Shown here in pieces: positions 9,202 through 49,964 of a DNA stretch of 64,000 nt. Source of the DNA: Macrostomum lignano (Eukaryota). The position numbers and the translations under genes were made by a program. Below the pieces are notes generated by a model. The model was not told where the DNA came from. It made no database searches and was given only the letters and a program-made list of their open reading frames with translations. How positions within the stretch are numbered: the first letter of the stretch is position 1; every line of letters begins with the position of its first letter. The stretch covers positions 1 to 64,000 of the forward strand of contig NIVC01001888.1 of NCBI GenBank assembly GCA_002269645.1, written 5' to 3'.

Positions 9202-12764
<3,563 letters not shown>

Positions 12765-28544: not shown

Positions 28545-28765
28545 AGGGGTCAAGGGAGTCAGTGGGGTCAAGGGGAGTCAGTAGGGTCAAGGGCATTCAG
28601 TGGGGTCAAGGGAGTCAGTGGGGTCAAGGGGAGTCAGTGGGGTCAAGGGAGTCAGTGGGGTCAAGGGGAGTCAGTAGGGTCAAGGGCATTCAGTGGGGTC
28701 AAGGGAGTCAGTGGGGTCAAGGGGATTCAGTGGGGTCAAGGGGAGTTAGTGGGGTCAAGGAGGGT
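28545..28765. repeat. 18-19-bp minisatellite (GGGGTCAAGGGAGTCAGT); counterpart at 47215-47565
   Basis: Direct reading. Confidence 0.85.
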
Positions 28766-28940
28766 TAGTGGAATAAAGGTCAGCGATGCAATTGAGGATT
28801 ACAAGTACTTGGTACATTTTTTGTAAACAAAAATGAGCGCATCCGACGTCCTTAGTTCGATTCGCGTGCTATGTAACAATAAGGCAACAGTAATAGTAAC
28901 TTTTTCAACTCAAATCCCAATTTTTTAGAGGCCTTCTCTA

Positions 28941-29115
28941 GGGGTGTCCTGGGGTGCCGCTGTCTTGGGTGTCCTGGGGTGCCGCTGTCTTGGGTGTCCT
29001 GGGGTGCCGCTGTCTTGGGTGTCCTGGGGTGCCGCTGTCTTGGGTGTCCTGGGGTGCCGCTGTCTTGGGTGTCCTGGGGTGCCGCTGTCTTGGGTGTCCT
29101 GGGGTGCCGCTGTCT
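28941..29115. repeat. 25-bp repeat x7 in the TZF-1 3' region (x2 in arm 2 at ~47005-47055)
   Basis: GGGGTGCCGCTGTCTTGGGTGTCCT units. Confidence 0.9.
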
Positions 29116-29339
29116 CTTCGGGTGTCTTCCATGTTCAGTGCAGAAAGGCGCATCGGCGGCCGAACCTGCAGTGCCCGAGCTGAAGGCCAGGCAAGGCACG
29201 GTGCGGTACAGTGGGTGTCGAACCACCGACCTCAGCTCGGATTTTCCGTGGGCGAACCGGCACTTCGGACCGTAAGGACAGCTGCCGCTCTCCTGCGATG
29301 GCGATTTCGGTGGGCCATGAGTATGACCGGGCTGAGGCT

Positions 29340-29900
29340 ATCTATGACCCATGCCTGGCCTATGATGCCCATGACCTATAATATCATGACCTATGCCTGG
29401 CCTATGATGCCCATGACCTAATATCTATGACCTATACCTGGCCTATGATGCCCATGACCTATAATATCATGACCTATGCCTCGCCTATGATGCCCATGAC
29501 CTAATATCTAAGATCTATACCTGGCCTATGATGCCCATGACCTAATATCTATGACCTATACCTGGCCTATGATGTCCATGACCTAAAATCTATGACCTAT
29601 ACCTGGCCTATGATGTCCATGACCTATAATATCATGACCTATGCCTGGCCTATGATGCCCATGACCTAATATCTATGACCTATACCTGGCCTATGATGCC
29701 CATGACCTATAATATCATGACCTATGCCTGGCCTATGATGCCCATGACCTAATATCTAAGATCTATACCTGGCCTATGATGCCCATGACCTAATATCTAT
29801 GACCTATACCTGGCCTATGATGCCCATGACCTATATTTGGCATTTGATGCCCATGACCTATAATATCGTGACCTATACTACCAATTACTTATAATACTTA
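29340..29900. repeat. ~41-bp TGACCT-containing minisatellite in TZF-1 intron 2 (counterpart 46400-46790)
   Basis: TGACCTATACCTGGCCTATGATGCCCATGACCTAATATCTA-type units. Confidence 0.85.
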
Positions 29901-30509
29901 TGACCTATACTTTCTATGACTACTAGCCTCTCCGACGACCAATCCATATGACCACTGTATTCCAACCCATTTATATGACCATCAATCCATATGAGCATCA
30001 ATCTCGATGAGCACCCACTTCTATGACCATAAATCTCAATAACCAGAAGCCACTATGACGATCAATATCTATGTCCATCACACCATACGACCACGAATTT
30101 TTATGACAATCCTGTGACCATCAGCCTCCATGACCATCAATCCATGACTACGAATCGTTATGACCCATTAGTCTGTGGCTCTCAGACCCTATGACCATTA
30201 AACCCTATGCTTTACCAAAGCATTTCTATAAGCCAAGATGCAGTCTACTTCGCACTCACAGAGTAGTTCAGGCAGAGCTCTGTTTTGTACTTCTCAGTGT
30301 CCAAGTCTCTTCTCCTTGAGCCCTCCTGTTCCTCCATCAGCAGGTCGCTGACCAGCCGGTCGATGAGGCAGAAAGTGTCTTCGTCCGTGATGACACTGGC
30401 TTGCTCTGAAATATGAAATTTGGATGATGATTGTCTGGGATTATTGGCTGAGTTCTAATGTGTTGGGTATGTTGTAAACATGTGTTGTGACTCCAGACTT
30501 GATGTGTTT

Positions 30510-31300
30510 TGAATGTGTGCTGAATGCGTACTGAATGTGTGCTGAATGTGTGCTGAATGCGTGCTGAATGTGTTCTGAATGTGTGCTGAATGTGTGCTGA
30601 ATGTGTGCTGAATGCGTACTGAATGTGTGCTGAATGTGTGCTGAATGCGTGCTGAATGTGTTCTGAATGTGTGCTGAATGTGTGCTGAATGTGTGCTGAA
30701 TGCGTACTGAATGTGTACTGAATGTGTACTGAATGTGTACTGAATGTGTACTGAATGTGTGCTGAATGCGTATTGAATGTGTACTGAATGTGTACTGAAT
30801 GTGTTCTGAATATGTTCTGAATGTGTGCTGAATGTGTGCTGAATGTGTGCTGAATGTGTGCTGAATGTGTGCTGAATGTGTGCTGAATGTGTGCTAAATG
30901 TGTACTGAATGTGTGCTGAATGTGTTCTGAATGTGTTCTGAATGTGTGCTGAATGTGTGCTGAATGTGTGTAGATGTGTTCTGAATGTGTGCTGAATGTG
31001 TGCTGAAAGCGTGCTGAATGTGTTCTGAATGTGTGCTGAATGTGTGTAGATGTGTTCTGAATGTGTTCTGAATGTGTGCTGAATGTGTGCTGAATGTGTG
31101 CTGAACGTGTTCTGAATGTGTGCTGAATGTGTGCTGAATGTGTGCTGAATGTGTGCTGAATGTGTACTAAATGTGTGCTGAATGTGTGCTGAATGTGTAC
31201 TGAATGTGTGCTGAATGTGTGCTGAATGTGTGCTGAATGTGTGCTGAATGTGTGCTGAATGTGTACTAAATGTGTGCTGAATGCGTACTGAATCTGTAAT
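30510..31300. repeat. 11-bp minisatellite (TGTGTGCTGAA) in TZF-1 intron 1 (counterpart 44960-45590)
   Basis: Direct reading. Confidence 0.92.
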
Positions 31301-31695
31301 AAATGGGTGCTAAATGTGCAATAAATTCAATGAGCTGTCAATCAAAAATCCAGGTGTAGCAGAAATTTGCTTACCTTCGCTCAGTCGCTGCTCTCCATAG
31401 GCGGTCAATCCGGAACTGGAACTGCAGCTGCTCATGGCTGGCTATCAAAATTGCTGAGCTGTGGTGAAAAGTTGAGTAGTGAGTTCGGATGATTTTCAGT
31501 TTCAAGCCGCACAGATCCTCAGGCCGCTTTTATCGCCTTTGAAGGGAGGGGACGCCTCCTGAGCCAATGGGAGAAGCATGGAGAACCTCCGGGCCCCTTG
31601 AACCCCTCCCTCACCTTAGCGAATGGGAATCGCCCAGTTTCGAGCAAGCTTTGGGGTGAATAAATCTTGTATAGAAACTGGTGGCTGAGTGAAAA

Positions 31696-32180
31696 TCCGC
31701 CCCTCTGACACTCCTCAATCCGCCCCTCTGACACTCCTCAATCCGCCCCTCTGACACTCCTCAATCCGCCCCTCTGACACTCCTCAATCCGCCCCTCTGA
31801 CACTCCTTAATCCGCCCCTCTGACACTCCTCAATCCGCACCTCTGACACTCCTCAATCCGCCCCTCTGACATTCCTCAATCCGCCCCTCTGACACTCCTC
31901 AATCCGCCCCTCTGACACTCCTCAATCCGCACCTCTGACATTCCTCAATCCGCCCCTCTGACACTCCTCAATCTGCCCCTCTAAAACTCAATCCGCCCCT
32001 ATGACACTCCTCAATCCGCCCCTATGACACTCCTCAATCCGCCCCTCTGACACTCCTCAATCCGCCCCTATGACACTCCTCAATCCGCCACTCCGACACT
32101 CCTCAATCCGCCCCTCTGACACTCCTCAATCGGCCCCTCTAAAACTCAATCCGCCCCTATGACACTCCCCAATCCGCCCC
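31696..32180. repeat. 23-bp GC-box VNTR (AATCCGCCCCTCTGACACTCCTC), ~21 units, upstream of TZF-1
   Basis: About 5 units at the arm-2 position 44275-44395. Confidence 0.9.
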
Positions 32181-32711
32181 AGTTTCCGAATTCGAGTCCG
32201 GGAAACAAAAGGGCGGCTCGGGAAATCCCACCAGACTTTGAGATGCCGTGCAGGGAAGCAGCAGGCAAAGCGTGGGCGGCCAGCATTTCGTGCGGGGGAC
32301 TCGCACTGATCCTCCACAACCGCAACCTCAGCCAGGACTCAACCCCCGCAGATCCCCGCAGACTCCGGCTGCCTGTCTGCGGTCGGCCTCAGCTCCGACC
32401 TGCGAGCTCTCAAAGCCAATGGCGGAGCGCTGCGGCAAAACTCAAAGTGCTCAGTAGCGAGATGCGGAGCCATAAATCACAGGTGGGCAGCACAAACAGC
32501 AGCTCACACCTCACACCAGCTGCCTGCGTGGAATCAAAGCCTGGGCTTGCAAGCTGTCTGTAGGGTGGTGCATGTACTTTTAAACTCACCGCTTACAGTT
32601 GATCAAACACTAAACTACTAAAGTTTAGTTGAGTTGGTTTTGCTGGGCTTTGGTCTTTGTTGGAATTGGAAAACTAACAGCTGTGTGAATTAGCTTTTTG
32701 GGTTCATGTCA

Positions 32712-33118
32712 TTCAAATTGAGGTTCAGGTCATTCAGATTGAGGTTCAGGTCATTCAGATTGAGGTTCAGGTCATTCAGATTGAGGTTCAGGTCATTCAG
32801 ATTGAGGTTCAGGTCATTCAGATTGAGGTTCAGGTCATTCAGATTGAGGTTCAGGTCATTCAGATTGAGGCTCAGGTCATTCAGATTGAGTTTCAGGTCA
32901 TTCAGATTGAGGCTCAGGTCATTCAGATTGAGTTTCAGGTCATTCAGATTGAGTTTCAGGTCATTCAGATTGAGGTTCAGGTCATTCAGATTGAGGTTCA
33001 GGTCATTCAGATTGAGGCTCAGGTCATTCAGATTGAGTTTCAGGTCATTCAGATTGAGGTTCAGGTCATTCAGATTGAGGCTCAGGTCATTGAGATTGAG
33101 GTTCAGGTCATTCAGATT
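32712..33118. repeat. 21-bp minisatellite (GATTGAGGTTCAGGTCATTCA); absent from arm 2
   Basis: Direct reading. Confidence 0.93.
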
Positions 33119-33499
33119 GTGGCTTATAGGTATAGCTCGTAACCGTATTTTACAGAAGAAAATCAATTGGATTTAAACTGCGCAGGACCACCCATTGGGA
33201 AAGACAATGGGAATGACAGCTTTTGGCTCCGCTTCTGAATTCTTCACTCTGACTTCTCTCTCTCTCAGTCTCTCTCTCTTAGTCTCTCTCTCGCAACAAC
33301 CACCCCACCATGCGCACTGAAGAGGGGACGCCAAGCGTACACACAAACAAGGGGGTGCAAGGCACACGACTAACCCTAACACCCTCTAATAGAATTGGGG
33401 AGGTCAGATCATGGAGTCCCGGTGTTAACCAAGCCAGCATGCTTTACTTTAAAATGTAAAGAAAATGAAAATCCCTTCTGACTCTCCTCTCCCTGGCCC

Positions 33500-33900
33500 T
33501 CTCGCTTTCCCTCTCCTCTCCGCCCCTCTCCGCCCCTCTCCACCCCTCTCCGCCGCTCTCCGCTCCTCTCCGCCCCTCTCCACCCCTCTCCGCCCTCTCC
33601 GCTCCTCTCCGCCTCTCTCCGCTCCTCTCCGCCCTTCTCCGCTCCTCTCCGCCCCTCTCCGCTCCTCTCCGCCCCTCTCCGCTCCTCTCCGCCCCTCTCC
33701 GCCCTTCTCCGCTCCTCTCCGCCCCTCTCCGCCCTTCTCCGCCCCTCTCCGCCCCTCTCCTCTCCTCTCCGCCCCTCTCCGGCCCTCTCAGGCCCTCTCC
33801 GGCCCTCTATGCCTCTCTCCACCTCTCTCCGTCCCTCTCCGCCCCTCGCTGTCCCTCTCCGGCCCACTCCGCCTCTCTCCGCCCCTCTCCGCCCCTCACC
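33500..33900. repeat. 10-bp (GCCCCTCTCC)n array; related arrays at 40400-41085 and 43232-43960
   Basis: Direct reading. Confidence 0.9.
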
Positions 33901-34636
33901 GCGCTTTAAACAACTCCAATCTCCTCTCCTCTCTCTCAATCTCCCTTTCGCTCCTCAGGCCGGCATGGCAACTCCCAGATCGCTCGAGTCGCTCCAGCAG
34001 CCGCAGCCACCTGGGCTGGCCGAGAGGCGACCGCGAATTCCCGCTTGGAAACCGCTTGGCAACGGAGAGCCGTCTCCAGCTGCAGCCAGCCTGCGGCCTC
34101 TCAGCTCCGTCACCCCCTTCCCAATCCGAGTCTCGTTTGGTTGCTGGGGCCATGGGAGTTGGGAGACGGCCTGGAGACGCGTCAGTCTGAGATGGCCAGT
34201 CGAGTCCACCTGTGTAAAGCTGAGTTCTCGGCATCTCAACATTTCAAGATGGAATTGTATAAATGTATGCTAAAAATCAGGATTCTTTTTAAGTTTCAAG
34301 CTGCATAAATACTGAACTCCTGCTCAAGAAACTCAATTGTCAGTTGTGAAGAAAATATTCAGCTTTAAAATGAGAGAAAGACTGTGAAAACTGTGAAAAC
34401 TTTGAACTGGCCTCGACTGTCACTGCCATGCAGTATTCTGTCTCCACCCTCTGTCTCCACCCCCAGTGAAAGCGCGTCAGCCAATAGCAGGCCGCCTCAC
34501 ACCCACAGGTGAAGATGATTGTCCGCATGGAGTATATTAGAGTGAATAATTTCTCAGATCTCAGGCAGACTAATTCCAATTCTAGGCTAACTGAAATCCG
34601 CAACCTACAGCTTCACCCAGCTTCTCTGCCTCATCA

Positions 34637-35943
34637 ATGCAGCCGTCAAGGAATCGCAGCTTCATTGGCCTGAGGTGAGTTCTGAGAGCAGGTTTGAGTA
34701 CAGGTGTCAGATTTATGCATATATACTGACAATTAATCGCATCACTTCCTATTTTTTGCGTGTGTTGTGTAGTTTTACCACTTTTAAATATAAGCCCGGC
34801 CCTTTCTCTCTCTCACTTCTCTCCTATTCTATCTCTCCTATCTCGCTCTTCCAATTTTACGACCGATTAAAACTTCCACTGTCCGCCTGTTGCTAAATTT
34901 AGCTGTGTTAGCTCATTCTTTGTTATTTGTCCCACTAGTAATTGGACAACAGGGCATGCTTTTGAGACCTACTTAGCTCAGCAGTGTATAACCTCCCTGC
35001 CGTCCTGATCAAGCCTAAATATAAAACTTCCCTGCACTCTCTTCACAGCCCGCGGGTAGCTGGAGAGGAACCGCTTCCCATTGTGAAGCACATTCTGCAG
35101 CTGCAGAATCGGTACCTGCAGTACCTGCGGCAGCAGACTAACACCCAGCAGCAGCACCAGCTCGACACCCAGCAGCAGCACCAGCTCGAGACCCAGCAGC
35201 AGCTCCAGCTCGACACCCAGCAGCAGCACCAGCTCGAGACCCAGCAGCAGCTCCAGCTCGAGACCCAGCAGCAGCTCAAGCTCGAGACCCAGCAGCAGCT
35301 CCAGCTCGAGACCCAGCAGCAGCTCCAGCTCGAGACCCAGCAGCAGCTCCAGCTCGAGACCCAGCAGCAGCTCCAGCTCGAGACCCAGCAGCAGCACCAT
35401 TTCGAGACCCAGCAGCAACTCCAGCTCGAGACCCAGCAGCAGCTCAAGCTCGAGACCCAGCAGCAGCTCCAGCTCGAGACCCAGCAGCAGCTCCAGCTCG
35501 AGACCCAGCAGCAGCTCCAGCTCGAGACCCAGCAGCAGCTCCAGCTCGAGACCCAGCAGCAGCACCATTTCGAGACCCAGCAGCAACTCCAGCTCGAGAC
35601 CCAGCAGCAGCTCAAGCTCGAGACCCAGCAGCAGCTCCAGCTCCAGTTCCAGCCCGCTGCCGCCCCGCTGCCCAACGCCGGCCTGCAGCGCGCGGTGCTC
35701 GCCAGGAACGCCAGCCGGCCGCGCCGCCCCGTCTTCTGCGTCTTCTGCCGCAAGAACGGCGAGCCGGAGGCCTTCAGCAGCGGCCACACCCTGAAGGACG
35801 GCAACGGCAGCGTCGCCTGCCCGGTGCTCAGCCGCTTCACCTGCCCGCTGTGCGGCGCCACCGGCGGCAGCGCCCACACCGTGAAATACTGCCCGCTGGG
35901 CACCGGCCACGGCTGCGGCCGCAGGAAACTGACAGGACAGTGA
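34637..35943 (+). CDS. nanos: Nanos (nanos-A), ~310 aa from the ATG at 34637; exons 34637-34674 and 35049-35943; further 5' exons possible
   Basis: C-terminal FCVFCRKNGEPEAFSSGHTLKDGNGSVACPVLSRFTCPLCGATGGSAHTVKYCP is the Nanos double CCHC finger. Phase-2 intron CTGAG|GTGAGT ... TTCACAG|C keeps frame. ~21 LETQQQLQ repeats precede the finger. The start codon is tentative. Confidence 0.9.
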
Positions 35944-37524
35944 CAGCCCTGCACTCTCAGCACCTCTTAACACCTCACTCTTAACCTGCACTCTTAACAC
36001 CTCAGCTCTGCATGCACTCTCAACTGTAATGCAAACCAACTATAAGTAAAAATTTGCAATACTTAATTTTGTTTTCTGCAACCAACCTTTGCTTTAAAAT
36101 TAAAATTAATAAATAATAAAGGAAAAGAATATATTCAATAAGTAAGTCAATAAGAGCAATTATTGTATGTCTGCAATCGGTCAATTTGCCACATAATTGT
36201 ATAGTTCGCCTCTTGTTTTGTCTGAAAGTAATTTTAGGACTTTGTTTAATGAGTATACCGGTGTTCATCGTCCTGAGTTCGAGTTCTTGATGGCAGACAG
36301 ACTCAGTCGTTAGACTCTAACGTATTGCGCTATTCGAGATATTCGGCTTTCAATTCAATCAAAGAATCTAAAAATAAAGGTACATATGCGCTTCAGAAAG
36401 CAGGAACTTCTATTAATAACCAGTTGGGATATACAATCGAATTCTTTCAGTTGAACTGAAAACTGCAGTAGAGAGAAACACAAGAGCATCGGGAATCTGT
36501 GCGGTGATGGGGAATCTCGGGGAGGATCTGTCTGAGTCCTCGCCACCAACCGCTGATAGAAATCTCTGGCAACCACGAAATATTGAGCCGTAAACGTTTG
36601 CTGGGAATAGAAATATTGAAGCCCATTATAACTTGCTCTATACCAGATACTAGACTAACTACGAGTAGATAGGCCACTCAGCACACTTGCGTGTAAGCTA
36701 CTTTTAGTTCAGTAGTAAGTTAAACTGAAGCATTTTAATGTATTTTTAAAGACAGGCTTTTACCCCCTAAACTTAAACCCTCAAACTCCCCCTACCTCTA
36801 CCCCCCCGCCCGCCGCCAAAATTTTATTACCTTCCTCGGTGGTTCCAGCCTAAATCTGCCTTGTACATTTCAGTGGACTGGCTAATGTACATTATGGCTG
36901 AACCAATTAGCAAGCTGTTTTCTTTTGCAAGCTTGGGCTTCTAAATTTATCAAAGTCATTTCATCTGCCTTTATTCTATAAAATAGCTTGTGTATTATTC
37001 TTTATTGGTATACTGACTTAAAGTTGAAAGCTGTTTTACTAAGTATACATTATGCTTGAGTGCCCCAATCTAGTCATTTGCTCTATACTAATCTCATTTC
37101 CCTTTCCCACAGAACCTGCACGCTTTTAAGTGCCGAGAATGAAAAAAAAACTATAATTAGGATTTTGGTTTCATGTAACAAGTTTACCATAAGCACTATT
37201 CACTCTGACACAACAGTACACTGACACAACAGCACACTGACACAACAACACACTGACACATACATAACTCGCAACAGAAATATCCACCAGTTCTGTCCTG
37301 TGCATTAACATGGCTCACTATTCTAGAGAAAAGAAATTTTTAGAAACTGCGGTTGCTAAGCTAAGCCTTTTCGAACCGATTTGAGGCTGGGGTGGCGGAG
37401 CTGAGAGGCCTCTGGCTAGCTGCAGCTGGGGAAAGCTCTCCGTTGCCAGGCGGTTTCCAAGCGGCAACTTTGGTTGGCCTCTCGGCCCAGGTGGCTGCGT
37501 GAATGCTGTGTTAGGCTTCTCAAT

Positions 37525-37640
37525 TTCTATTGGTTAAAATTTGCTGACGCGCAGTCTCAGCTGTTCCCATTGGCTGAGAAAGCTTGCAATGACCGCCGAG
37601 CCCCCCCCCCCCCCGAGGCCTTCGATGGGACTATAAAATG
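37525..37640 (+). promoter_or_regulatory. Candidate promoter of TZF-3 (two ATTGG boxes, C-tract, TATAAAA)
   Basis: TTCCCATTGGCTG...CCCC...TATAAAA resembles the TZF-2 upstream region TTCTCCCATTGGCTC...CCCCTCCCC...GATAAAAG at 44700-44750. Confidence 0.45.
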
Positions 37641-37899
37641 TTTATATTATTCTAATCTAACCGAATTCAAGCAGCACAAAACTGAAACTCCGTAATTATT
37701 TAGTTTACAATCGTAATTTCGATTAAATAAAATAATCTGCGTAGGAACCATCACCGGCTGAAGCGCCCAATACTTACTTAGCTCGTATCAAGAAGAATCT
37801 AACCGAATTCAAGCCAACCTCGATTTTAACAGTTAACTGGAGCATTGTCAGCCAATATGGCAAGTTATATATCCTGACTGTCTTTAGGCTTCCTGACCC

Positions 37900-38417
37900 T
37901 GACATACCTCTATAGATCCTGGCACACCTCTATAGATCCTGACACACCTCTATAGATCCTGGCACACCTCTATAGATCCTGACACACCTCTATAGATCCT
38001 GGCACCTCTCTTCTCTAAGATTCTGACACACCTCTATAGATCCTGGCACCTCTCTTCTCTATAGATTCTGACACATCTCTATAGATCCTGGCACCTCTCT
38101 ATAGATTCTGACACACCTCTATAGATCCTGGCACCTCTCTATAGATCGTGACACACCTCTATAGATCGTGACACACCTCTTTAGATCGTGACACACCTCT
38201 ATAGATCGTGACACAACTCTATAGATCGTGACACACCTCTATAGATCGTGACACACCTCTATAGATCGTGACACACCTCTATAGATCGTGACACACCTCT
38301 ATAGATCGTGACACACCTCTTTAGATCGTGACACACCTCTATAGATCGTGACACACCTCTATAGATCGTGACACACCTCTATAGATCGTGACACACCTCT
38401 ATAGATCGTGACACACA
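37900..38417. repeat. 20-bp minisatellite (ATAGATCGTGACACACCTCT)
   Basis: Direct reading. Confidence 0.92.
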
Positions 38418-38557
38418 TTTACAGATGCTGACGCAAAGAAATGGACGCCATTAGATACCCTGCTTGCTATTTTCAAGCCATAAAAATCAATAAAGCAGTC
38501 TAGAATCATACCACCAATGCATTAATTTTGTAAACCACTCTCAACTCCAAATTTCAG

Positions 38558-40008
38558 TCCACCTCTCCAAGCACTCCATCAACCGAAGCAGGCAGCCCCT
38601 GTATAGGCTCAGCTTCCAGTGCCGCAGTTTCAGCCGGACTGAAATTTAAAACAGAGTTGTGCCGGAACTTCGAAGTGAGTCCTACACAGCTCTGCTGCTC
38701 TTGCTGCTTTATTTTCGTAAAACCGCCATCTGACACCCCACCCACAACCTGCCCCTATCCTCTCTGACACCCCCAAAATCTGCCCCTATCCTCTCTGACA
38801 CCCCCAATCTGCCCCTATCCTCTCTGACACCCCAATCTGCCCCTATCCTCTCTGCCACTCCCACAATCTGCCCCTATCCTCTCTGACACCCCCAAAATCT
38901 GCCCCTATCCTCTCTGACACCCCCAATCTGCCCCTATCCTCTCTGACACCCCCAATCTGCCCCTATCCTCTCTGCCACTCCCACAATCTGCCCCTATCCT
39001 CTCTGCCACTCCCACAATCTGCCCCTATCCTCTCTGACACCCCCAATCTGCCCCTATCCTCTCTAACACCCCACAATCTGCCCCTATCCTCTCTAACACC
39101 CCACAATCTGCCCCTATCCTCTCTGACACCCCACAACCTGCCCCTAATCCTCTCTGACACCCCACAATCTGGCCCTAATCCTCTCTGCCACTCCCACAAT
39201 CTGGCACCTAATCCTCTCTGGCACCCCCACAATCTGGCACCTAATCCTCTCTGGCACCCCCACAATCTGCCCCTAATCCTCTCTGGCACCCCACAATCTG
39301 CCCTAATCCTCTCTGCCACTCCCACAATCTGGCACCTAATCCTCTCTGGCACCCTCACAATCTGGCACCTAATCCTCTCTGGCACCCCCACAATCTGGCA
39401 CCTAATCCTCTCTGGCACCCCCACAATCTGCCCCTAATCCTCTCTGGCACCCCCACAATCTGCCCCTAATCCTCTCTGATGGGGTCCCTTGACAAGTCCC
39501 CATCCGCCCCTGACAAGTCCCAATCCGCCCCTGACAAGTCCCCATCCGCCCCTGACAAGTCCCAATCCGCCCCTGACAAGTCCCCATCCGCCCCTGACAA
39601 GTCACCATCCGCCCCTGACAAGTCCCCATCCGCCCCTGACAAGTCACCATCCGCCCCTGACAAGTCCCCATCCGCCCCTGACAAGTCACCATCCGCCCCT
39701 GACAAGTCACCATCCGCCCCTGACAAGTCACCATCCGCCCCTGGCAAGTCACCATCCGCCCCTGGCAAGTCACCATCCGCCCCTGACAAGTCACCATCCG
39801 CCCCTGACAAGTCACCAGCCGCATCCACCCCGCACTCCCGCAGCTCAGCGGCAGCTGCCCTTTTGCCAACCGGTGCCAATTCGCCCACGGCCCCGAGGAG
39901 CTGCGAGGCCGGCCCGACCGGCACTGGCTGTACAAAACGGAGCCCTGCCGCGCTTTCCATGGCGAAGGACTCTGCCGGTACGGCGGCCGCTGTCATTTTC
40001 TACACTGA
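38558..40008 (+). CDS. Third, diverged TIS11/ZFP36-like tandem CCCH gene (TZF-3); exons 38558-38674 and 39844-40008; first exon(s) not resolved
   Basis: TTTCAG|STSPSTP...GLKFKTELCRNFE|GTGAGT ... CCGCAG|LSGSCPFANRCQFAHGPEELRGRPDRHWLYKTEPCRAFHGEGLCRYGGRCHFLH*. Two C-x8-C-x5-C-x3-H fingers with (F/Y)KTE(L/P) lead-ins. Same intron position as TZF-1/2. Confidence 0.9.
38745..39817. repeat. Two adjacent minisatellites in the TZF-3 intron: ~29-bp (CTGCCCCTATCCTCTCTGACACCCCAAT) then 21-bp (CCATCCGCCCCTGACAAGTCA)
   Basis: Direct reading; switch at ~39480. Confidence 0.9.
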
Positions 40009-40399
40009 TTGACTTATGTGCATAGTTGTATGTATGTTTGTATTTATGTGTATATACGTCCATATGCTTAAAAATACAGACTTTACAGACTTATTTAAAA
40101 AATAATCCAACATATACTCAATTCCCGTTAAATTCTATTTAACTGACTTATTTTCTTGAAAATCAAATTTTCATACTGCGGTGAAGCTGATAAACTAAGA
40201 AGAGAATGCAACAAGGGAGGAAATAGGAGAGGAAATGGCGGGAGGCAACTTAGCGTCGGTTCGATATTCGGTGCCGCTCAGCTTAAGCTATTCGCCTCAC
40301 TTATTGTACTCATGTTTCTCTGTACTCGTGCTTTGAAATCTGTGACAATGAATTCATAGATGGGTGGACCTTTTTTCTAAACCTTTCTGCAAAGTCTCC

Positions 40400-41387: not shown

Positions 41388-42243
41388 GGAAAATCGCGGA
41401 GGTGCGATCAGGAAATGTAAGGTTTTTTTTGGAAGCAGTTCTTGAGGTGCTTTGTGAAGCTGCTGTGTTAAACGACTTATAGTCCTCGGTCGGGGTCAGT
41501 CAGTCAGTCAGTCAGGCTGGGCCTCAAAGCAGGCTTCACAGCAGGGTTTCTCAGTTTTTTATTGTCTGTTTAACAGCAATTATTTATGCTTCCTTGACCT
41601 TATTCGCTGAGGAGCGAAGATTTGCGCTCACCTACGATATGAGCTGGAGACCATACGTACCCTCGTATATCGTTTGAGTCCAACTCGGTTGCTTGCCAAG
41701 CGGTGACCGCGGTGACCCAGCTGTGAGCTGCAGTCAGCAAAGCCGACCAGCCGAAGCGGTGAAGTCCGATCTGCAGCAGCTTGAGACACCTGGGATGCTC
41801 AGGTTGGCTCAGCTCTCCAAGTGTTCGTAACAGCCCAGTTCGAGTTGTGCTGATTCGCCATGGCAACTAGCGGGAATGCAGAGCTCGGGGCCGAGACCAG
41901 GTGGGCCCGGCAGCGGAATGAAAGCAACTGGCTGCCCCCCTCAATTTCACTTTGAGTCCGTCTGCCATCAAAAACTGGAACTTTGGAATTCGAACTCAGG
42001 ACGATCAATATTCTCATCAACTAGAGTTCTAAAGGAACCACATCACAAGCGTGTTCGACAAAGTGATGGATTGCAACTAATTTCATAACTTGTTAATTGA
42101 TTATATATTATACTCGTAATTTTCTAATTAGTGTTTATTTAATAAAATTTTAAAGCAAAGATTACGAGTAGTTACAGAACACAAAACTAGGCATTCCATA
42201 TTTTATGTGGTTAGTTTGTATTACAATTGAGAGTGCAGGGCTG

Positions 42244-42853
42244 TCACTGTCCTGTCAGTTTCCTGCGGCCGCAGCCGTGGCCGGTGCCCAGCGGGCAGTA
42301 TTTCACGGTGTGGGCGCTGCCGCCGGTGGCGCCGCACAGCGGGCAGGTGAAGCGGCTGAGCACCGGGCAGGCGACGCTGCCGTTGCCGTCCTTCAGGGTG
42401 TGGCCGCTGCTGAAGGCCTCCGGCTCGCCGTTCTTGCGGCAGAAGACGCAGAAGACGGGGCGGCGCGGCCGGCTGGCGTTCCTGGCGAGCACCGCGCGCT
42501 GCAGGGCGGCGTTGGGCAGCGGGGCGGCAGCGGGCTGGAACTGGAGCTGGAGCTGCTGCTGGGTCTCGAGCTGGAGCTGCTGCTGGGTCTTGAGCTGGTG
42601 CTGCTGCTGGGTCTCGAGCTGGAGCTGCTGCTGGGTCTCGAGCTAGAGCTGCTGCTGGGTCTCGAGCTGGAGCTGCTGCTGGGTCTCGAGCTTGAGCTGC
42701 TGCTGGGTCTCGAGCTGGAGCTGCTGCTGGGTCTCGAGCTGGAGCTGCTGCTGGGTTTCGAGCTGGAGCTGCTGCTGGGTCTCGAGCTGGAGCTGCTGCT
42801 GGGTGTCAGTCTGCTGCCGCAGGTACTGCAGGTACCGATTCTGCAGCTGCAGA
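42244..42853 (-). pseudogene. nanos: nanos-B: intact zinc-finger segment, but start exon and acceptor deleted and an in-frame TAG in the Q-rich repeat
   Basis: ZF region essentially identical to nanos-A. CAG>TAG at 42645-42643. Junction GCTAAAAA-TC-TGCAGCTG at ~42853 joins the equivalents of 34278 and 35096. Confidence 0.85.
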
Positions 42854-43231
42854 TTTTTAGCATACATTTATAAAATTCCATCTTGAAATGTTTCGATGCC
42901 GAGAACTCAGCTTTACACAGGTGGACTCGACTGGGCATCTCAGACCGACGCGTCTCCAGGCCGTCTCCCAACTCCCATGGCCCCAGCAACCAAACGAGAC
43001 TCGGATTGGGAAGGGGGGTGACGGAGCTGAGAGGCCGCAGGCTGGCTGCAGCTGGAGACGGCTCTCCGTTGCCAAGCGGTTTCCAAGCGGGAATTTGCGG
43101 TTGCCTCTCGGCCAGCCCAGGTGGCTGCGGCTGCTGGAGCGACTCGAGCGATCTGGGAGTTGCCATGCCGGCCTGAGGAGCGAAAGGGAGATTGAGAGAG
43201 AGGAGAGGAGATTGGAGTTGTTGAAAGCGCG

Positions 43232-43960
43232 GTGAGGGGCGGAGAGGGGCGGAGAGAGGCGGAGAGGGCCGGAGAGGAGCGGAGAGGGGCGGAGAGGGGC
43301 GGAGAGGGGCGGAGAGAGGCGGAGAAAGGCGGAGAGGGGCGGAGAGCGGCGGAGAGAGGCGGAGAGGGCCGGAGAGGGGCGGAGAGGGGCGGAGAGCGGC
43401 GGAGAGAGGCGGAGAGGGCCGGAGAGGGGCGGAGAGGGCCGGAGAGGGGCGGAGAGGGGCGGAGAGGGGCGGAGAGGGGCGGAGAGGGGCGGAGAGGGGC
43501 GGAGAGGGGCAGAGAGGGGCAGAGAGGGGCGGTGAGGGGCGGAGAGCGGCGGAGAGAGGCGGAGAGGGCCGGAGAGGGCCGGAGAGGGGCGGAGAGCGGC
43601 GGAGAGAGGCGGAGAGAGGCGGAGAGGGGCGGAGAGGGGCGGAGAGGGGCGGAGAGAGGCGGAGAGGGCCGGAGAGGGGCGGAGAGGGGCGGAGAGGGGC
43701 GGAGAGGGCCGGAGAGAGGCGGAGAGGGCCGGAGAGGGGCGGAGAGCGGCGGAGTGAGGCGGAGAGGAGCGGAGAGAGGCGGAGAGGGCCGGAGATGGGC
43801 GGAGAGGGCCGGAGAGGGGCGGAGAGAGGCGGAGAGGGCCGGAGAGGGGCGGAGAGGGGCGGAGAGGGGCGGAGAGGGCCGGAGAGGGGCGGAGAGCGGC
43901 GGAGAGAGGCGGAGAGGGCCGGAGAGGGGCGGAGAGCGGCGAAGAGGGGCGGAGAGGAGC
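43232..43960. repeat. (GGAGAGGGGC)n array, expanded counterpart of 33500-33900
   Basis: Direct reading. Confidence 0.92.
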
Positions 43961-44840
43961 GGCGAGGTAGAGGTTGAGGTAGAAAGGCGAGGGAAAGCGA
44001 GAGGGCGAGGGAGAGGAGATGAAGAGGTAGAGTCAGAAGGGATTTTCAGTTTCTTGACATTTTGAAGTGAGCTGGCTGCTCTCCAAAGCAGCCGGAGTCT
44101 GTGGGGATCTGCGGTGGGGAGTCCTGGCTGGGGTTGCAGTGGGGAGGATCAGTGCGAGTTCCCCGCACGAAATGCTGGCCGCCCACGCTTTGCCTGCTGC
44201 TTCCCTGCACGGCGTCTCAAAGTCTTGTGGGGATTTCCGAGCCGCCCTTTTTTCCCGGACTCGAATTCGGAAACTGGGGTGGATTGAGGAGTGTCAGAGG
44301 GGCGGATTGAGGAGTGTCAGAGGGGCGGATTGGGGAGTGTCAGAGGGGCGGATTGAAGAGCGTCAGAGGGGCGGGTTGAGGACTGTCAGAGTGACACGAA
44401 GTGTGTCAGAGTGAATTCCCCAAATCCATTTTAGGAAATAGTTTCATAGCTTCGTTTTCATTTGATTCATGGTGTCATCGTGTCATTTCCTTAATTTTGC
44501 TTTCTGCTGCCTTTTCGCAATGCTTTGCCTTTCCTTATGAGAGGGGGTCATCAGACCGGGATGTCTTTTCTCCAGAAAGTTAAGCATTGATTTTCACTCA
44601 GCCACCAGTTTCTATACAAGATTTATTCACCCCAAAGCTTGCTCGATCCCCATTCGCTAAGGTGAGGGAGGGGTTCAAGGGGCCCGGAGGTTCTCCTTGC
44701 TTCTCCCATTGGCTCACGAGGCGTCCCCTCCCCTCAAAGGCGATAAAAGCGGCCTGAGGATCTGTGCGGCTTGAAACTGAAAATCATCCGAACTCACTAC
44801 TCAACTTTTCACCACAGCTTAGCAATTTTGATAGCCAGCC

Positions 44841-46983
44841 ATGAGCAGCTGCAGTTCCAGTTCCGGATTGACCGCCTATGGAGAGCTGCGACTGAGCGAA
44901 GGTACGCAAATTTCTGCTGCACCTGGCTTCTTGATTGACAGCTCATTGAATTTATTGCACATTCAGCACACATTCAGCACACATTCAGCACACATTCAGT
45001 ACGCATTCAGCACACATTCAGTACACATTCAGCACACATTCAGCACACATTCAGAACACATTCAGCACACATTCAGCACACATTCAGAACACATTTAGCA
45101 CACATTCAGCACACATTCAGTACGCATTCAGCACACATTCAGCACACATTCAGCACACATTCAGCACACATTCAGTACGCATTCAGCACACATTCAGTAC
45201 ACATTCAGCACACATTCAGCACACATTCAGAACACATTCAGCACACATTCAGCACACATTCAGCACACATTCAGCACACATTCAGCACACATTCAGAACA
45301 CATTCAGCACACATTCAGCACACATTCAGAACACCTTCAGCACACATTCAGCACGCATTCAGCACACATTCAGCACACATTCAGCACACATTCAGCACAC
45401 ATTCAGCATACATTCAGAATGCATTCAGATTCAGAACATATCTACACACTCAGAACACATCTACAGACATTCAGAACACATTCAGTACGCATTCAGCACA
45501 CATTCAGTACACATTCAGTACACATTCAGTACGCATTCAGCACGCATTCAGCACACATTCAGCACACATTCAGCACACATTCAGAACACATCAAGTCTGT
45601 AGTCACAACACATGTTTACAACATACCCAACACATTAGAACTCAGCCAATAATCCCAAACAATCATCATCCAAATTTCATATTTCAGAGCAAGCCAGTGT
45701 CATCACGGACGAAGACACTTTCTGCCTCATCGACCGGCTGGTCAGCGACCTGCTGCTGGAGGAACAGGAGGGCTCAAGGAGAAGAGACTTGGACACTGAG
45801 AAGTACAAAACAGAAATCTGCCTGAACTACTCTGTGAGTGCGAAGTAGACTGTGCATCTTGGCTTATAGAAATGCATTGGTAAAGCATAGGGTTTAATGG
45901 TCATAGGGTCTGAGATCCACAGATTGATGTGTCATAAGGATTCGTAGTCATGGACTAATGGTCATGGAGGCTGATGGTCACAGGATTGTCATAAAAATTC
46001 GTGGTCGTATGGTGTGATGGACATAGATATTGATCGTCATAGTGGCTTCTGGTTATTGAGATTTATGGTCATAGAAGTGGGTGCTCATCGAGATTGATGC
46101 TCATTGCTCGAGGTTGATGGATTGATGGTCATATGGATGGGTTGCAATACAGTGATGGTTATATAGATGGGTTGCAATACAGTGATGGTCATATAGATGG
46201 GTTGCAATACAGTGATGGTCATATAGATGGGTTGCAATACAGTGATGGTCATATAGATGGGTTGCAGTACAGTGATGGTCATAAAGATGGGTTGCAGTAC
46301 AGTGATGGTCATAAAGATGGGTTGCAATACAGTGATGGTCATATAGATGGGTTGCAATACAGTGATGGTCATATAGATGGGTTGCAATACAGTGATGGTA
46401 TAGCCAGGTATAGGTCATAGATATTAGGTCATGGGCATCATAGGCCAGGTATAGATCATAGATTTTAGGTCATGGGCATCAAAGCCAGGTATAGGTCATA
46501 GATATAAGGTCATGGGCATCATAGACCAGGTATAGGTCATAGATATTAGGTCATGGGCATCATATTCCAGGTATAGGTCATAGATATTAGGTCATGGACA
46601 TCATAGGCCAGGTATAGGTCATGGACGTCATAGGCCAGGTATAGGTCATGATATTATAGGCCATTTGCATCATAGGCCAGGTATAGGTCATAGACATTAG
46701 GTCATGGGCATCATAGGCCAGGTATAGGTCATAGATATTAGGTCATGGGCATCATAGGCCAGGCATAGGTCATAGATAGCCTCAGCCCGGTCATACTCAT
46801 GGCCCACCGAAATCGCCATCGCAGGAGAGCGGCAGCTGTCCTTACGGTCCGAAGTGCCGGTTCGCCCACGGCAAATCCGAGCTGAGGTCGGTGGTTCGAC
46901 ACCCACTGTACCGCACCGTGCCTTGCCTGGCCTTCAGCTCGGGGCACTGCAGGTTCGGCCGCCGATGCGCCTTTCTGCACTGA
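44841..46983 (+). CDS. TIS11/ZFP36-like tandem CCCH zinc-finger protein (TZF-2), 121 aa, intact; exons 44841-44901, 45688-45833, 46825-46983
   Basis: [122 protein letters not shown]-x8-C-x5-C-x3-H, 18-aa linker, C-x7-C-x5-C-x3-H. Exon lengths 61+146+159 = 366. Confidence 0.9.
46137..46400. repeat. 30-bp repeat x9 (GATGGGTTGCAATACAGTGATGGTCATATA) in TZF-2 intron 2
   Basis: Present as a single diverged monomer in arm 1 (~29945-29980). Confidence 0.9.
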
Positions 46984-49964
46984 ACATAGAAGACACCCGA
47001 AGAGACAGCGGCACCCCAGGACACCCAAGACAGCGGCACCCCAGGACACCCCAAAAGAAGGCCTTTAAAAAATTATGATTTGAGTTGAAAAGTTACTATT
47101 ACTGTTGCCTTATTGTTACATACTACGCGAATCGAACTAAGGACGTCGGATGCGCTCATTTTTGTTTACAAAAAATGTACAAAGTACTTGTAATCCTCAA
47201 TTGCATCGCTCACCTTTACTCCACTGACCCTCCTTGACCCTACTGACCCTCCTTGACTCCACTGACTCCCCTTGACCCTAATGACTCCCCTTGACCCCAC
47301 TGATCCCTTGACCCCACTGACTCCCTTTGACCCCACTGAATCCAATGACTCCCCTTGACCCCACTGACTCCCTTTGACCCCACTGAATCCAATGACTCCC
47401 CTTGACCCCACTGACTCCCTTTGACCCCACTGAATCCCCTTGACCCCACTGATCCCTTGACCCCACTGACTCCCTTTGACCCCACTGAATCCCCTTGACT
47501 CCACTGACTCCCTTTGACCCCACTGAATCCAATGACTCCCCTTGACCCACTGATCTTTTGACCCCTTTGCTTTTGCCTCTCTTCTGAATTGAATTTTCCC
47601 ATCGGCGCATCGCTTAAAATATTTTTGATTGCACATTTAAGGCCAAACTGTTTCCGAATCGCTTCTTACATCTTCGATTTTGCATGAGTTACACAGTTCT
47701 GTAGTTGTCTGTCTGTAATTTTTAAAGCAAATAACCGCAACTTTCTTGCTAAGCTGCATGACTTTAAAAGTATAACAACCAGTAATTTTTGCCCATTTGT
47801 AATTACATTCAGTTAATATAAGTAGGATAAAATAAACTCAATATGCTGCTTTGTACAGACCCTTAGTAAATATTTTCTATGCAATTATCTTTGCTAAATT
47901 TTGTTGAATTCATTAAAAAGATGCAGCGCTTGTTTTAAGACTGAAATTAACGCTAAATAAAGCTTGGGATATTACACGGAGGGATGGGCCTCAGTGGCTG
48001 AGGGTCCGCAAGGACAGACCAAGCGTGAGGTTCAAGGACGCCTGCACTGCCGGCTGTGCTATTTTTAGAATCAGTCGAGTTGAGACTCCACAGGTGGGTC
48101 TGCGGCGGTTGCTAAGGGCAGCTCTAGGTTTTCGAACCGGTTTGAAGGCTCGACTTCCAGGTGGACTTAAAGGTTGAGGGCAGCGGGGTTGAGAGGCCGC
48201 AGGCTGGCTGCAGCTGGAGACGACTCTCCGTTGCCAAGCGGTTTCCAAGCGGGAATTCGCGGTCGCCTCTTGGCCAGCCCAGGTGGCTGCGGTTGCTGGA
48301 GCGACTCGAGCGATCTGGGAGTTGCCATGCCGGCCTGAGGAGCTGTGAGATTTGAACTGGGTGAGGGCAGCTGAGGGAGAGAAGTGAAAGTTCGAGGTTT
48401 TGTGTTGCATGGGGAGGGAGAGGGAGAGGGAGAGGGTGAGGGAGAAGGAGAGAGAGGGAGAGGGAGAGGGAGAGGGAGAGGGTGAGGGAGAAGGAGAGAG
48501 AGGGAGAGGGAGAGGGAGAGGGTGAGGGAGAGGGAGAGGGAGAAGGAGAGGGAGAGGGAGAGGGAGAGGGAGAGGGAGAGGGAGAGGGAGAGGGAGAGGG
48601 TGAGGGAGAAGGAGAGAGAGGGAGAGGTAGAGATAGGTAGAGAGGAGCCAGAATAGGCTTTTCGGTTTCTTTACATTTTCAAGTGAAGATCGCTGGCGTT
48701 GTTAACACCAGGTGGGATTCCATGATCTGAGCCGGGGACTCCTAAAAATAGCTCAGGTGCAAAATAGCATGGCGCTAGCTCTAGAAGTCCTTGTCTGAGC
48801 TTTACTATTTCATTTGAAGGTGAGTGAGAGGGAAGTCAGAGTGTTAGAATTCAGAAGCGGAGCCAAAATCTCATTCCCATTGTCCCTCTCCATGGGTTGT
48901 CCTGTCCAATTCCTTGCCTTGCTTCAACTTGCTTCGCGACACCCGAAGATCTGACAGTGAAATGATTTATTTTCCTCTGCATTTCTCAGGTTCTCGCATC
49001 AGCTGTAAGGTCAATATGAGAGCGGCGGATTGGCAGAGGGGCGGATTGGCAGAGGGGCGGATTGGCAGAGGGGCGGATTGGCAGAGGGGGCGGATTGGAT
49101 GAAGGGGCGGATTGGATGAAGGGGCGGATTGGCAGAGGGGGCGGATTGGATGAAGGGGCGGATTGGCAGAGGGGGCGGATTGGATGAAGGCGCGGATTGG
49201 CAGAGGGGCGGATTGGCAGGGGGCGGATTGGCAGAGGGGCGGATTGGCAGAGGGGCGGATTGGCAGAGGGGGCGGATTGGCAAAGGGGGCGGATTGGATG
49301 AAGGGGCGGATTGGCAGAGGGGCGGATTGGATGAAGGGGCGTATTGGCAGGGGGCGGATTGGCAGAGGGGCAGATTGTCAAAATCGGTGGCAGCAAACGA
49401 AAGTTCTGCCAATCTGTGTGACAAGCTGCTCTGCATGTCTGAAACCTGCTGTAACTGAGACTGAACTGGTAGACAAGTTGCTAAAAATGAGGAAAAGAAA
49501 GCTAAGAGTCCACACACGCAGCTCGTGCGGGATGTGAGCTGCTGTTTGTCAAAGCGGCTGCCCACCTGTGATTTATGGCCCCGCAACTCGCTACTGAGCG
49601 CTTTGAGTTTTGCCGCAGCGCTGCCGCCATTGGCTGAGGCCTCGAGAGCTGCGGTGGGGAATCTCGGGGAGGATCTGAGTTCACTCCACGAACCGGTTGC
49701 GTCCCTGCGCCGTCTGTAAGTCTGGCGGGCCTTCCCGAGCTGTCACATTAAAAATATCCCTATGCATGTTTGCTATAAATTGTTTTAAACTGCAAATCGC
49801 CGCAGAAATTGCTTAAAATCCAAAACCGGTGTCAAGAGAGGAACTATGTAGAAGAAAATGGAGCTGAATTTAGTAACAGTCGAAAAAGATTTCACAGGTG
49901 GGTCAGCGTTTGTTGCTAAGTGTAGCACTGGGGTTTTGAGGACCAAAGCAAGAGGGAAGCAGAG

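What the first reader, a model, noticed from the sequence alone, without database searches (positions are those of the whole stretch)
38558..40008. Hidden third TZF paralogue in the palindrome spacer, not shown by the ORF track
Seen: two exons (117 and 165 nt) separated by a minisatellite-filled intron encode KFKTELCRNFE|LSGSCPFANRCQFAHGPEELRGRPDRHWLYKTEPCRAFHGEGLCRYGGRCHFLH*. It is far more diverged from TZF-1/2 than they are from each other, yet keeps the intron position and the stop right after the last His. Both fingers have canonical x8-x5-x3 spacing, whereas TZF-2 finger 2 is x7 with a YRTVP lead-in. Inference: an older duplication, and possibly a different RNA specificity between paralogues.
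Basis: seen in the sequence. Interest (0 to 1): 0.7.

Follow-up and report, generated by a model that had tools for sequence, protein, structure and literature searches.

The report
Small tandem zinc-finger gene, already annotated
The stretch is a real, intact, three-exon gene of the flatworm Macrostomum lignano that encodes a 94-residue RNA-binding protein of the tristetraprolin (ZFP36/TIS11) type; the same gene model is already in GenBank as a hypothetical protein, so it is ordinary.

Summary
Exon 38558-38674 and exon 39844-40008 have good splice sites and join in frame. Together they encode two C-x8-C-x5-C-x3-H fingers, and the stop codon follows the last His directly. The domain matches Pfam zf-CCCH (8.7e-17) and the solved TIS11d (1.3e-20) and TTP (3.2e-18) tandem zinc-finger domains.

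The window is Macrostomum lignano or a very close relative. A second copy of the locus, GenBank NIVC01001363.1, already carries this gene as BOX15_Mlig028414g1 (94 aa, 99% identical).

An upstream exon ends in the start codon (ATG 37857-37859) and is followed by a GC-AG intron. The gene therefore has three exons, not two.

It lies in the 6.3-kb spacer of a palindrome whose arms each carry a 121-aa paralogue, TZF-1 and TZF-2. I built those two gene models here; they have no match in the protein database searched.

Against TZF-2, synonymous sites are near saturation (dS about 1.3, dN about 0.36). The split is therefore old and the domain has been under constraint.

The protein is little more than the RNA-binding domain. 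It probably binds AU-rich RNA but has no canonical domain for recruiting a deadenylase. Function and RNA specificity are untested.

The parts
37565..37638 (+). Putative core promoter of TZF-3: an inverted CCAAT-box 11-mer TCCCATTGGCT (37565-37575) and TATAAAA (37632-37638)
   Evidence: The 11-mer occurs only three times in the 64-kb window. Each copy lies upstream of one TZF gene and in that gene's orientation: 37565 (+), 44704 (+) and 31562 (-). The TATAAA box lies 225 nt before the ATG and is conserved in L001. The promoter role is inferred, not shown.
37665..37859 (+). Exon 1: 5' UTR plus the start codon only (ATG 37857-37859). The 5' end is inferred as about 30 nt after the TATA box.
   Evidence: The annotated CDS of P0001 starts at L001:10001 with ATG|GCAAGT. 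The identical 19-mer GTCAGCCAATATGGCAAGT is at window 37847-37865. No other ATG lies between 37638 and 37857, and an in-frame TAA lies 27 nt upstream, in both copies.
37860..38557 (+). Intron 1 (698 nt, GC-AG: donor GCAAGT, acceptor TTTCAG), holding a 20-nt minisatellite at 37900-38416
   Evidence: The donor matches the GC-donor consensus.
38558..38674 (+). Exon 2 (117 nt): a Ser/Thr/Pro/Ala-rich tail plus the KFKTEL lead-in and the first Cys of finger 1
   Evidence: It differs by 1 nt (E11G) from the annotated copy.
38675..39843 (+). Intron 2 (1169 nt, GT-AG, phase 0), holding 31-nt and 21-nt minisatellites
39844..40008 (+). Exon 3, coding part (165 nt): the rest of finger 1, a 19-residue linker, finger 2, and TGA directly after the last His
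   Evidence: It has one synonymous difference from the annotated copy.
40009..40100 (+). Start of the 3' UTR, with a UAUUUAU heptamer at 40041-40047. The poly(A) site is not determined.
   Evidence: The heptamer is conserved in L001 at 12395. The two copies diverge beyond about 40098.
44841..46983 (+). TZF-2 (right arm), a model built here: exon 1 coding part 44841-44901, exon 2 45688-45833, exon 3 46825-46983; 121 aa
   Evidence: The exon phases fit (61 nt + 146 nt + 159 nt).
29135..31435 (-). TZF-1 (left arm), the mirror of TZF-2: exon 1 31435-31375, exon 2 30405-30260, exon 3 29292-29135. In this window a 1-nt deletion in a G run (29174-29176) shifts the frame of finger 2.
25664..35959 (.). 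Left arm of the palindrome
42228..49734 (.). Right arm of the palindrome

Best explanation
TZF-3 is an intact three-exon nuclear gene of Macrostomum lignano or a very close relative. It is the window's copy of the annotated gene BOX15_Mlig028414g1.

Exon 1 is a 5' UTR that ends exactly in the start codon. A GC-AG intron and a GT-AG intron, both filled with minisatellites, are then removed. The mRNA encodes a 94-residue protein: a disordered 29-residue Ser/Thr/Pro/Ala tail followed by one tandem CCCH zinc-finger domain of the ZFP36/TTP/TIS11 type, ending at the last zinc ligand.

Shown here: the reading frame, the splice sites, the domain identity, the public gene model, the position in the palindrome spacer, and the old split from the arm paralogues TZF-1/2 under constraint.

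Inferred: the domain binds single-stranded AU-rich RNA of the UAUUUAU type as TIS11d does, because all eight zinc ligands, both lead-in motifs and the four aromatic positions aligned with TIS11d are kept. The protein has no sequence after the domain, so it lacks the C-terminal RLP(I/V)F-type motif that hits P0003, P0006, P0007 and P0147 carry. It probably cannot recruit CCR4-NOT in the canonical way. It would then act as an occupier or competitor at AU-rich sites, or through another partner, rather than as a classical decay activator.

I put about 0.85 on the gene model and family. I put about 0.4 on the binds-but-does-not-recruit mechanism.
For: Frame, splice sites and finger spacing.

Domain identity: Pfam zf-CCCH twice, E=8.7e-17. 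PDB sequence matches over the whole domain: 9Y10 6.7e-21, TIS11d 1RGO 1.3e-20, TTP 1M9O 3.2e-18.

Structure: in the AlphaFold model the two fingers have pLDDT about 80 and residues 1-29 are below 50. The best Foldseek match is 1RGO at E=1.4e-8, then POS-1.

Nearest relatives: among 1.84 billion cluster representatives, the named ones among the ten high-identity hits I looked up are ZFP36 and ZFP36L1-like proteins of fishes and a rodent, and a rotifer protein.

Public model: P0001, 94 aa, 99% identical, on NIVC01001363.1, with the same three TZF genes in the same order and orientation. That annotation derives from RNA-seq (PMC5730564).

Start codon: the exon-1 ATG, its GC donor, an upstream stretch free of other ATGs, an in-frame stop and a TATA box are all conserved in both copies.

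Constraint: dN 0.36 against dS 1.32 versus TZF-2. There is no non-synonymous change in the TZF domain between the two TZF-3 copies.
Against: I could reach no transcript reads, so splicing in this exact copy is inferred from the annotation of a 93-97% identical copy.

No expression or functional data were found.

The linker is 19 residues, against the 18 seen in the TIS11d and 9Y10 alignments. That could change the spacing of the RNA half-sites.

The first lead-in is KFKTEL and the second is LYKTEP, not (R/K)YKTEL.

The two TZF-3 copies differ at only 2 of 282 coding sites, against about 2% substitutions in the flanks. Recent selection cannot be tested with so few differences.

Lack of CCR4-NOT recruitment is argued only from the absence of sequence.
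Confidence: 0.8

Rival explanations
1. The start codon comes from the spliced leader rather than from cis exon 1. The M. lignano 35-nt SL ends in ATG. If it is trans-spliced to the acceptor at 38557/38558, it gives ATG|TCC ACC..., which is exactly the same 94-aa protein. Both routes may be used.
For: The SL sequence ends in ATG, and the top motif at trans-splice acceptors is [T/C]TNCAG (PMC8629364). The exon 2 acceptor is TTTCAG, and exon 2 starts on a codon boundary. All reported flatworm SLs carry a 3' ATG that can potentially serve as a start codon (PMC12582326, citing Cheng et al. 2006). ATG 37857 is the nearest upstream ATG followed by GT or GC.
Against: The GenBank model comes from genome-guided StringTie assembly of STAR end-to-end alignments with SL sequence trimmed, so its ATG must lie in a genomic exon supported by reads. 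The donor is a full GCAAGT consensus rather than a bare GC. A TATA box, an ATG-free leader and an in-frame stop fit a real 5' exon. An upstream cis donor normally favours cis-splicing (Conrad et al. 1993, as cited in PMC8629364).
Confidence: 0.2
2. TZF-3 is not a local duplicate of TZF-1/2. It is a separate ZFP36-family gene that happens to lie between them.
For: Over the domain it is 59% identical to TZF-2, but 61% to TIS11d and 65-67% to a rotifer protein and a fish ZFP36. The N-terminal parts show no similarity. Beyond one shared 11-mer, the promoter/exon-1 DNA alignment is not significant (19 of 500 shuffles reach the local score).
Against: The two gene types share the three-exon plan. They share the phase-0 intron at the same residue of finger 1 and the stop directly after the last His. 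They share L-Y-x-T-x-P before finger 2 and SGSCP in finger 1. The 11-mer TCCCATTGGCT is found only upstream of the three genes. A 110-nt element lies upstream of all three in gene orientation. The genes lie within 7 kb of each other.
Confidence: 0.12
3. TZF-3 is a decaying or untranslated copy, and the public model is an annotation by-product.
For: It is very short (94 aa). The first coding exon holds only ATG. The intron donor is non-canonical (GC). No publication or expression table mentions it. The neighbouring TZF-1 carries a frameshift in this window.
Against: The ORF, all splice sites and all eight zinc ligands are intact in two copies of the locus. dN/dS is about 0.27 against TZF-2, with synonymous sites near saturation. 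The model derives from transcripts.
Confidence: 0.08

Closest known systems
ZFP36 / tristetraprolin / TIS11 family (TIS11d TZF-RNA structure 1RGO; TTP 1M9O)
   Same: Two C-x8-C-x5-C-x3-H fingers, each with a YKTEL-like lead-in. The aromatic residues after the second and third Cys of each finger are kept. The domain is 58-67% identical across its whole length.
   Different: The protein is only 94 aa and ends at the last His. It has no N-terminal activation domain and no C-terminal RLP(I/V)F-type motif. The linker is 19 residues, not 18. The lead-ins are KFKTEL and LYKTEP. An intron lies inside finger 1.
BOX15_Mlig028414g1, hypothetical protein / C3H1-type domain-containing protein, Macrostomum lignano (GenBank assembly GCA_002269645.1, contig NIVC01001363.1)
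   Same: It is the same gene: 94 aa, 93 of 94 residues identical, with the same exons, the same palindrome context and the same three TZF genes.
   Different: One residue differs (E11 here, G11 there), plus one synonymous change. The flanks are 91-97% identical, with minisatellite length differences and an indel of about 200 nt after 40098. This is a second copy, allele or assembly of the locus.
TZF-1/TZF-2 of the same palindrome (121 aa, model built here)
   Same: The same three-exon plan, intron phase and position, stop after the last His, and L-Y-x-T-x-P before finger 2. A CCAAT 11-mer and a 110-nt element lie upstream.
   Different: In TZF-1/2, exon 1 encodes 20 residues rather than Met alone. 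The N-terminus is acidic and unrelated. Finger 2 is C-x7-C, the linker is 18 residues, and domain identity to TZF-3 is 59%.
C. elegans germline TZF proteins (POS-1 6NZL, MEX-5 6PMG)
   Same: They are small CCCH TZF regulators that bind RNA without a ZFP36-type decay domain. POS-1 is the second-best structural match.
   Different: Sequence similarity is much lower (E=3.4e-12 against 1e-20). The finger spacing and lead-ins differ.

Membership tests
ZFP36/TTP/TIS11 tandem zinc-finger family | Two CCCH fingers, each C-x8-C-x5-C-x3-H | tested here: met
   CRNFELSGSCPFANRCQFAH and CRAFHGEGLCRYGGRCHFLH.
ZFP36/TTP/TIS11 tandem zinc-finger family | Significant similarity over the whole TZF domain to solved family members | tested here: met
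   1RGO E=1.3e-20 and 1M9O E=3.2e-18, query residues 30-94. Foldseek against 1RGO E=1.4e-8.
ZFP36/TTP/TIS11 tandem zinc-finger family | Exactly 18 residues between the His of finger 1 and the first Cys of finger 2 | tested here: not met
   There are 19 residues (GPEELRGRPDRHWLYKTEP). HMMER places a one-residue gap in both 1RGO and 9Y10. TZF-2 has 18.
ZFP36/TTP/TIS11 tandem zinc-finger family | (R/K)YKTEL lead-in before each finger | tested here: inconclusive
   KFKTEL (Y to F) and LYKTEP (K to L, L to P). K-T-E is kept in both.
ZFP36/TTP/TIS11 tandem zinc-finger family | Aromatic residues after Cys2 and Cys3 of each finger, which stack on RNA bases in TIS11d (from my own knowledge of 1RGO) | tested here: met
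   CPF...CQF in finger 1 and CRY...CHF in finger 2 align with CKY...CQF and CPY...CHF of TIS11d.
ZFP36/TTP/TIS11 tandem zinc-finger family | C-terminal conserved motif (RLPIF-type, CNOT1 binding) and N-terminal effector region | tested here: not met
   The stop codon follows the last His. The motif is visible in hits P0003, P0006, P0007 and P0147 but has no counterpart here.
ZFP36/TTP/TIS11 tandem zinc-finger family | Binding to UAUUUAU-type AU-rich RNA | not testable with these tools
   Needs EMSA or Bind-n-Seq.
Flatworm genes whose start codon is the spliced-leader AUG | An acceptor of the [T/C]TNCAG type, with the first exon base in frame with the SL ATG | tested here: met
   TTTCAG|TCC gives M-S-T-S... 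with the SL ...GCATG.
Flatworm genes whose start codon is the spliced-leader AUG | SL-bearing reads at the acceptor, and no cis donor upstream | tested here: not met
   A cis donor, ATG|GCAAGT, exists and is the one used in the public model. SL reads could not be examined.

The most novel reading that the evidence does not exclude
TZF-3 is a natural domain-only version of a ZFP36-type protein. It occupies AU-rich sites without recruiting a deadenylase, so it opposes full-length family members. Its Met can be supplied equally by a cis exon that ends in ATG or by the spliced leader's ATG, which would give two promoter-independent routes to the same protein. The palindrome arms carry a diverged pair (C-x7-C in finger 2) with a different RNA preference.
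Probability: 0.1. Interest if true: 0.5.

Novelty: new member of a known kind. Interest (0 to 1): 0.22.

Why it matters
The direct value is modest. The work confirms a gene model, explains where its start codon comes from, and gives first models for the two unannotated arm paralogues.

If followed up, a 94-residue protein that is little more than a tristetraprolin-type RNA-binding domain could serve as a natural probe. It would show what that domain does without its decay-activating regions, in a flatworm that is open to transgenesis and RNAi.

The three-gene palindrome is also a compact case for studying arm-to-arm homogenisation against divergence in the spacer.

Tried and rejected
- Expression and literature: the gene identifier is absent from the full-text library and from the supplements of two M. 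lignano expression papers. No paper links Macrostomum with a CCCH TZF gene or with this palindrome.
- Protein search with TZF-2 (100 aa): no hit. TZF-1/2 therefore could not be compared with a public model.
- Exhaustive representative search: the top of the list is dominated by long multi-finger proteins with summed scores. P0001 is alone in its 50% cluster, so no orthologue from another species was recovered.
- Homology of TZF-3 exon 1 with TZF-1/2 exon 1: a MAFFT alignment suggested that the ancestral ATG and donor are mutated in TZF-3. Shuffle controls did not support this. The local score was reached by 19 of 500 shuffles, and the global score of 32 fell within the shuffle maximum of 33.5. 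I dropped the idea and kept only the shared 11-mer.
- Recent selection from the two TZF-3 copies: 2 coding differences in 282 nt, against about 2% substitutions in the flanks, is too few to test.
- Rfam scan of 25000-50000: nothing.
- An aligner artefact placing a leftover SL ATG: considered, and judged unlikely given the annotation method and the full GC-donor consensus.

Full report
**1. What is there**

- Exon 38558-38674 (117 nt) is preceded by aatttcag and followed by gtgagt.
- Exon 39844-40008 (165 nt) is preceded by ccgcag and ends in TGA directly after the last His.
- The joined frame gives STSPSTPSTEAGSPCIGSASSAAVSAGLKFKTELCRNFE|LSGSCPFANRCQFAHGPEELRGRPDRHWLYKTEPCRAFHGEGLCRYGGRCHFLH*.
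- The 1169-nt intron holds a 31-nt array (38741-39479) and a 21-nt array (39486-39822).
- Pfam scores the peptide as two zf-CCCH domains, E=8.7e-17.

A six-frame motif scan and tblastn find three TZF loci in the window and no more:
- 29.1-30.3 kb on the minus strand (TZF-1);
- 38.6-40.0 kb on the plus strand (TZF-3);
- 45.8-47.0 kb on the plus strand (TZF-2).

**2. Organism and prior knowledge**

The spliced peptide hits one near-identical protein, P0001: 94 aa, 99% identity, full coverage. It is 'hypothetical protein BOX15_Mlig028414g1 [Macrostomum lignano]', which UniRef calls a C3H1-type domain-containing protein.

Its contig is NIVC01001363.1 of GCA_002269645.1. That contig carries the same arrangement as the window: TZF-1 on the minus strand, TZF-3 and TZF-2 on the plus strand, and inverted arms. 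Identity to the window is about 91-97% in unique sequence.

The window is therefore M. lignano or a very close relative (lineage). It holds a second copy, allele or assembly of a locus that is already annotated. Finding the palindrome in two separate sequences argues against an assembly artefact.

**3. The missing start codon**

P0001 begins M-STSPS. Its CDS starts at L001:10001 with ATG followed at once by GCAAGT. The 19-mer GTCAGCCAATATGGCAAGT is identical in the window at 37847-37865. TZF-3 therefore has three exons:
- exon 1, from about 37665 to 37859, contributes only the ATG (37857-37859);
- intron 1, 37860-38557, is a GC-AG intron holding a 20-nt minisatellite;

Several features, present in both copies, support a real 5' exon:
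- a TATAAAA box lies 225 nt upstream of the ATG;
- no other ATG lies between that box and the start codon;
- an in-frame TAA lies 27 nt upstream of the ATG;
- the donor matches the full GC-donor consensus.

The GenBank annotation was made from RNA-seq with STAR, StringTie, TBONE and TransDecoder, after trimming spliced-leader sequence (PMC5730564). The model therefore implies spliced reads. I could not inspect the reads myself.

**4. A second possible route to the same protein**

The 35-nt M. lignano spliced leader ends in ATG, and trans-splice acceptors favour [T/C]TNCAG (PMC8629364). The exon 2 acceptor is TTTCAG, and exon 2 begins on a codon boundary. Trans-splicing there would encode the identical 94-aa protein. 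All reported flatworm spliced leaders carry a 3' ATG that can potentially provide a start codon (PMC12582326). I rank this route as a rival or an additional path, because a cis donor exists and is the one used in the public model.

**5. Family**

Sequence search of solved structures gives 9Y10 6.7e-21, TIS11d (1RGO) 1.3e-20, TTP (1M9O) 3.2e-18 and POS-1 (6NZL) 3.4e-12. All cover residues 30-94.

An AlphaFold model built on 14 sequences has pLDDT about 80 for the two fingers and below 50 for residues 1-29. Its best Foldseek match is 1RGO at E=1.4e-8.

The exhaustive search of 1.84 billion representatives finds 9347 relatives at E up to 0.001, but none within 50% identity over the full length. 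Ten high-identity hits were looked up. Those that carry a name are ZFP36 and ZFP36L1-like proteins of fishes and a rodent, and an Adineta protein.

The protein departs from the canonical family in four ways:
- the linker has 19 residues rather than 18;
- the lead-ins are KFKTEL and LYKTEP;
- no sequence follows the last His, so the RLP(I/V)F-type C-terminal motif seen in P0003, P0006, P0007 and P0147 is absent;
- an intron lies inside finger 1.

**6. The paralogues and the palindrome**

The arms run about 25664-35959 and 42228-49734 at 88-98% identity. The spacer is 35960-42227, and TZF-3 lies in it.

I built a model for TZF-2:
- exon 1 coding part 44841-44901, [20 protein letters not shown] plus one base, donor GTACGC;
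- exon 2 at 45688-45833;
- exon 3 at 46825-46983;
- 121 aa in all, and the exon phases fit.

TZF-1 is its mirror image: 31435-31375, 30405-30260 and 29292-29135.

All four TZF-1/2 copies in the window and L001 keep the reading frame, with one exception. The window's TZF-1 has lost one G from a GGGG run (29174-29176, against 46941-46944 in TZF-2). That shifts finger 2 out of frame. It could be a real lesion or a homopolymer error.

TZF-1/2 gave no hit in the protein database. No gene other than P0001 is called within 10 kb in L001. In public data, then, TZF-3 is the visible gene and the arm copies are the hidden ones.

**7. Age and constraint**

Over 63 aligned codons, TZF-3 and TZF-2 are 59% identical in protein and 63% in DNA. 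Nei-Gojobori estimates are dS 1.32 and dN 0.36. By contrast, the TZF-1/2 exons differ by only about 1-2%. The split is old, and the domain has been constrained since.

TZF-3 is no closer to TZF-2 than to vertebrate ZFP36 domains (61-67%). The case for a local duplication therefore rests on shared structure:
- the three-exon plan;
- the phase-0 intron at the same residue of finger 1;
- the stop directly after the last His;
- L-Y-x-T-x-P before finger 2, and SGSCP in finger 1;
- the 11-mer TCCCATTGGCT, found only three times in 64 kb, each time upstream of one TZF gene in that gene's orientation;
- a 110-nt element upstream of all three genes.

A wider promoter alignment is not significant.

**8. 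Mechanism**

Shown: the gene structure, the domain identity and the context.

Inferred: the domain binds AU-rich single-stranded RNA as TIS11d does. Because it has no effector regions, the protein more likely occupies or competes for such sites, or works through another partner, than activates decay. The 19-residue linker in TZF-3 and the C-x7-C second finger with LYRTVP in TZF-1/2 are reasonable grounds to suspect different site preferences. Nothing here tests that.

**9. Verdict**

The gene model is already public, and the protein belongs to a well-known family. Interest is low to moderate.

Noticed in passing
window 29174-29176 (minus-strand gene TZF-1), compare 46941-46944: The left-arm paralogue has GGG where the right arm and both copies in L001 have GGGG. 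This shifts the frame of finger 2. It is either a real pseudogenising deletion or a homopolymer sequencing error.
   Followed up: partly
window 44841-46983 (+) and 31435-29135 (-): TZF-1/2 have a conserved 61-nt first coding exon, giving a 121-aa protein. That protein had no match in the 5.8-billion-sequence protein database, and no gene is called for it on the GenBank contig.
   Followed up: yes
window 37389-37499 (+), 43015-43129 (+), 34116-34002 (-), 48183-48291 (+), 27912-27799 (-): A 110-115-nt element (GGTGGCGGAGCTGAGAGGCC...CCCAGGTGGCTGCG) occurs five times at 80-84% identity. One copy lies upstream of each TZF gene in that gene's orientation, and one lies in each outer arm. It is better conserved than the coding sequence, so it may be a dispersed repeat or a regulatory module. 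It has no Rfam match.
   Followed up: partly
window 37565, 44704 (+) and 31562 (-): The 11-mer TCCCATTGGCT (an inverted CCAAT box) occurs only three times in the window. Each copy lies 137-292 nt upstream of a TZF start codon.
   Followed up: partly
window 40041-40047; L001 12395: A UAUUUAU heptamer, the core site of TTP-type proteins, sits in TZF-3's own 3' UTR and is kept in both copies. It could allow autoregulation, or it could be chance in AT-rich sequence.
   Followed up: no
window about 40099-40298: About 200 nt just downstream of TZF-3 has no counterpart in the GenBank copy, where the flanking sequences are adjacent. This is an indel in or near the 3' UTR.
   Followed up: no
window 193-3933 (-): An intact 1246-aa ORF of a non-LTR retrotransposon, with endonuclease, reverse transcriptase and RNase H domains.
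   Followed up: no
window 5999-8077, 9202-12764, 14181-14932: A 3.5-kb (TATC)n microsatellite is flanked by 12-nt minisatellite arrays that are reverse complements of each other (CTCACCCTGTCT and AGACAGGGTGAG). This is a second inverted arrangement in the window.
   Followed up: no
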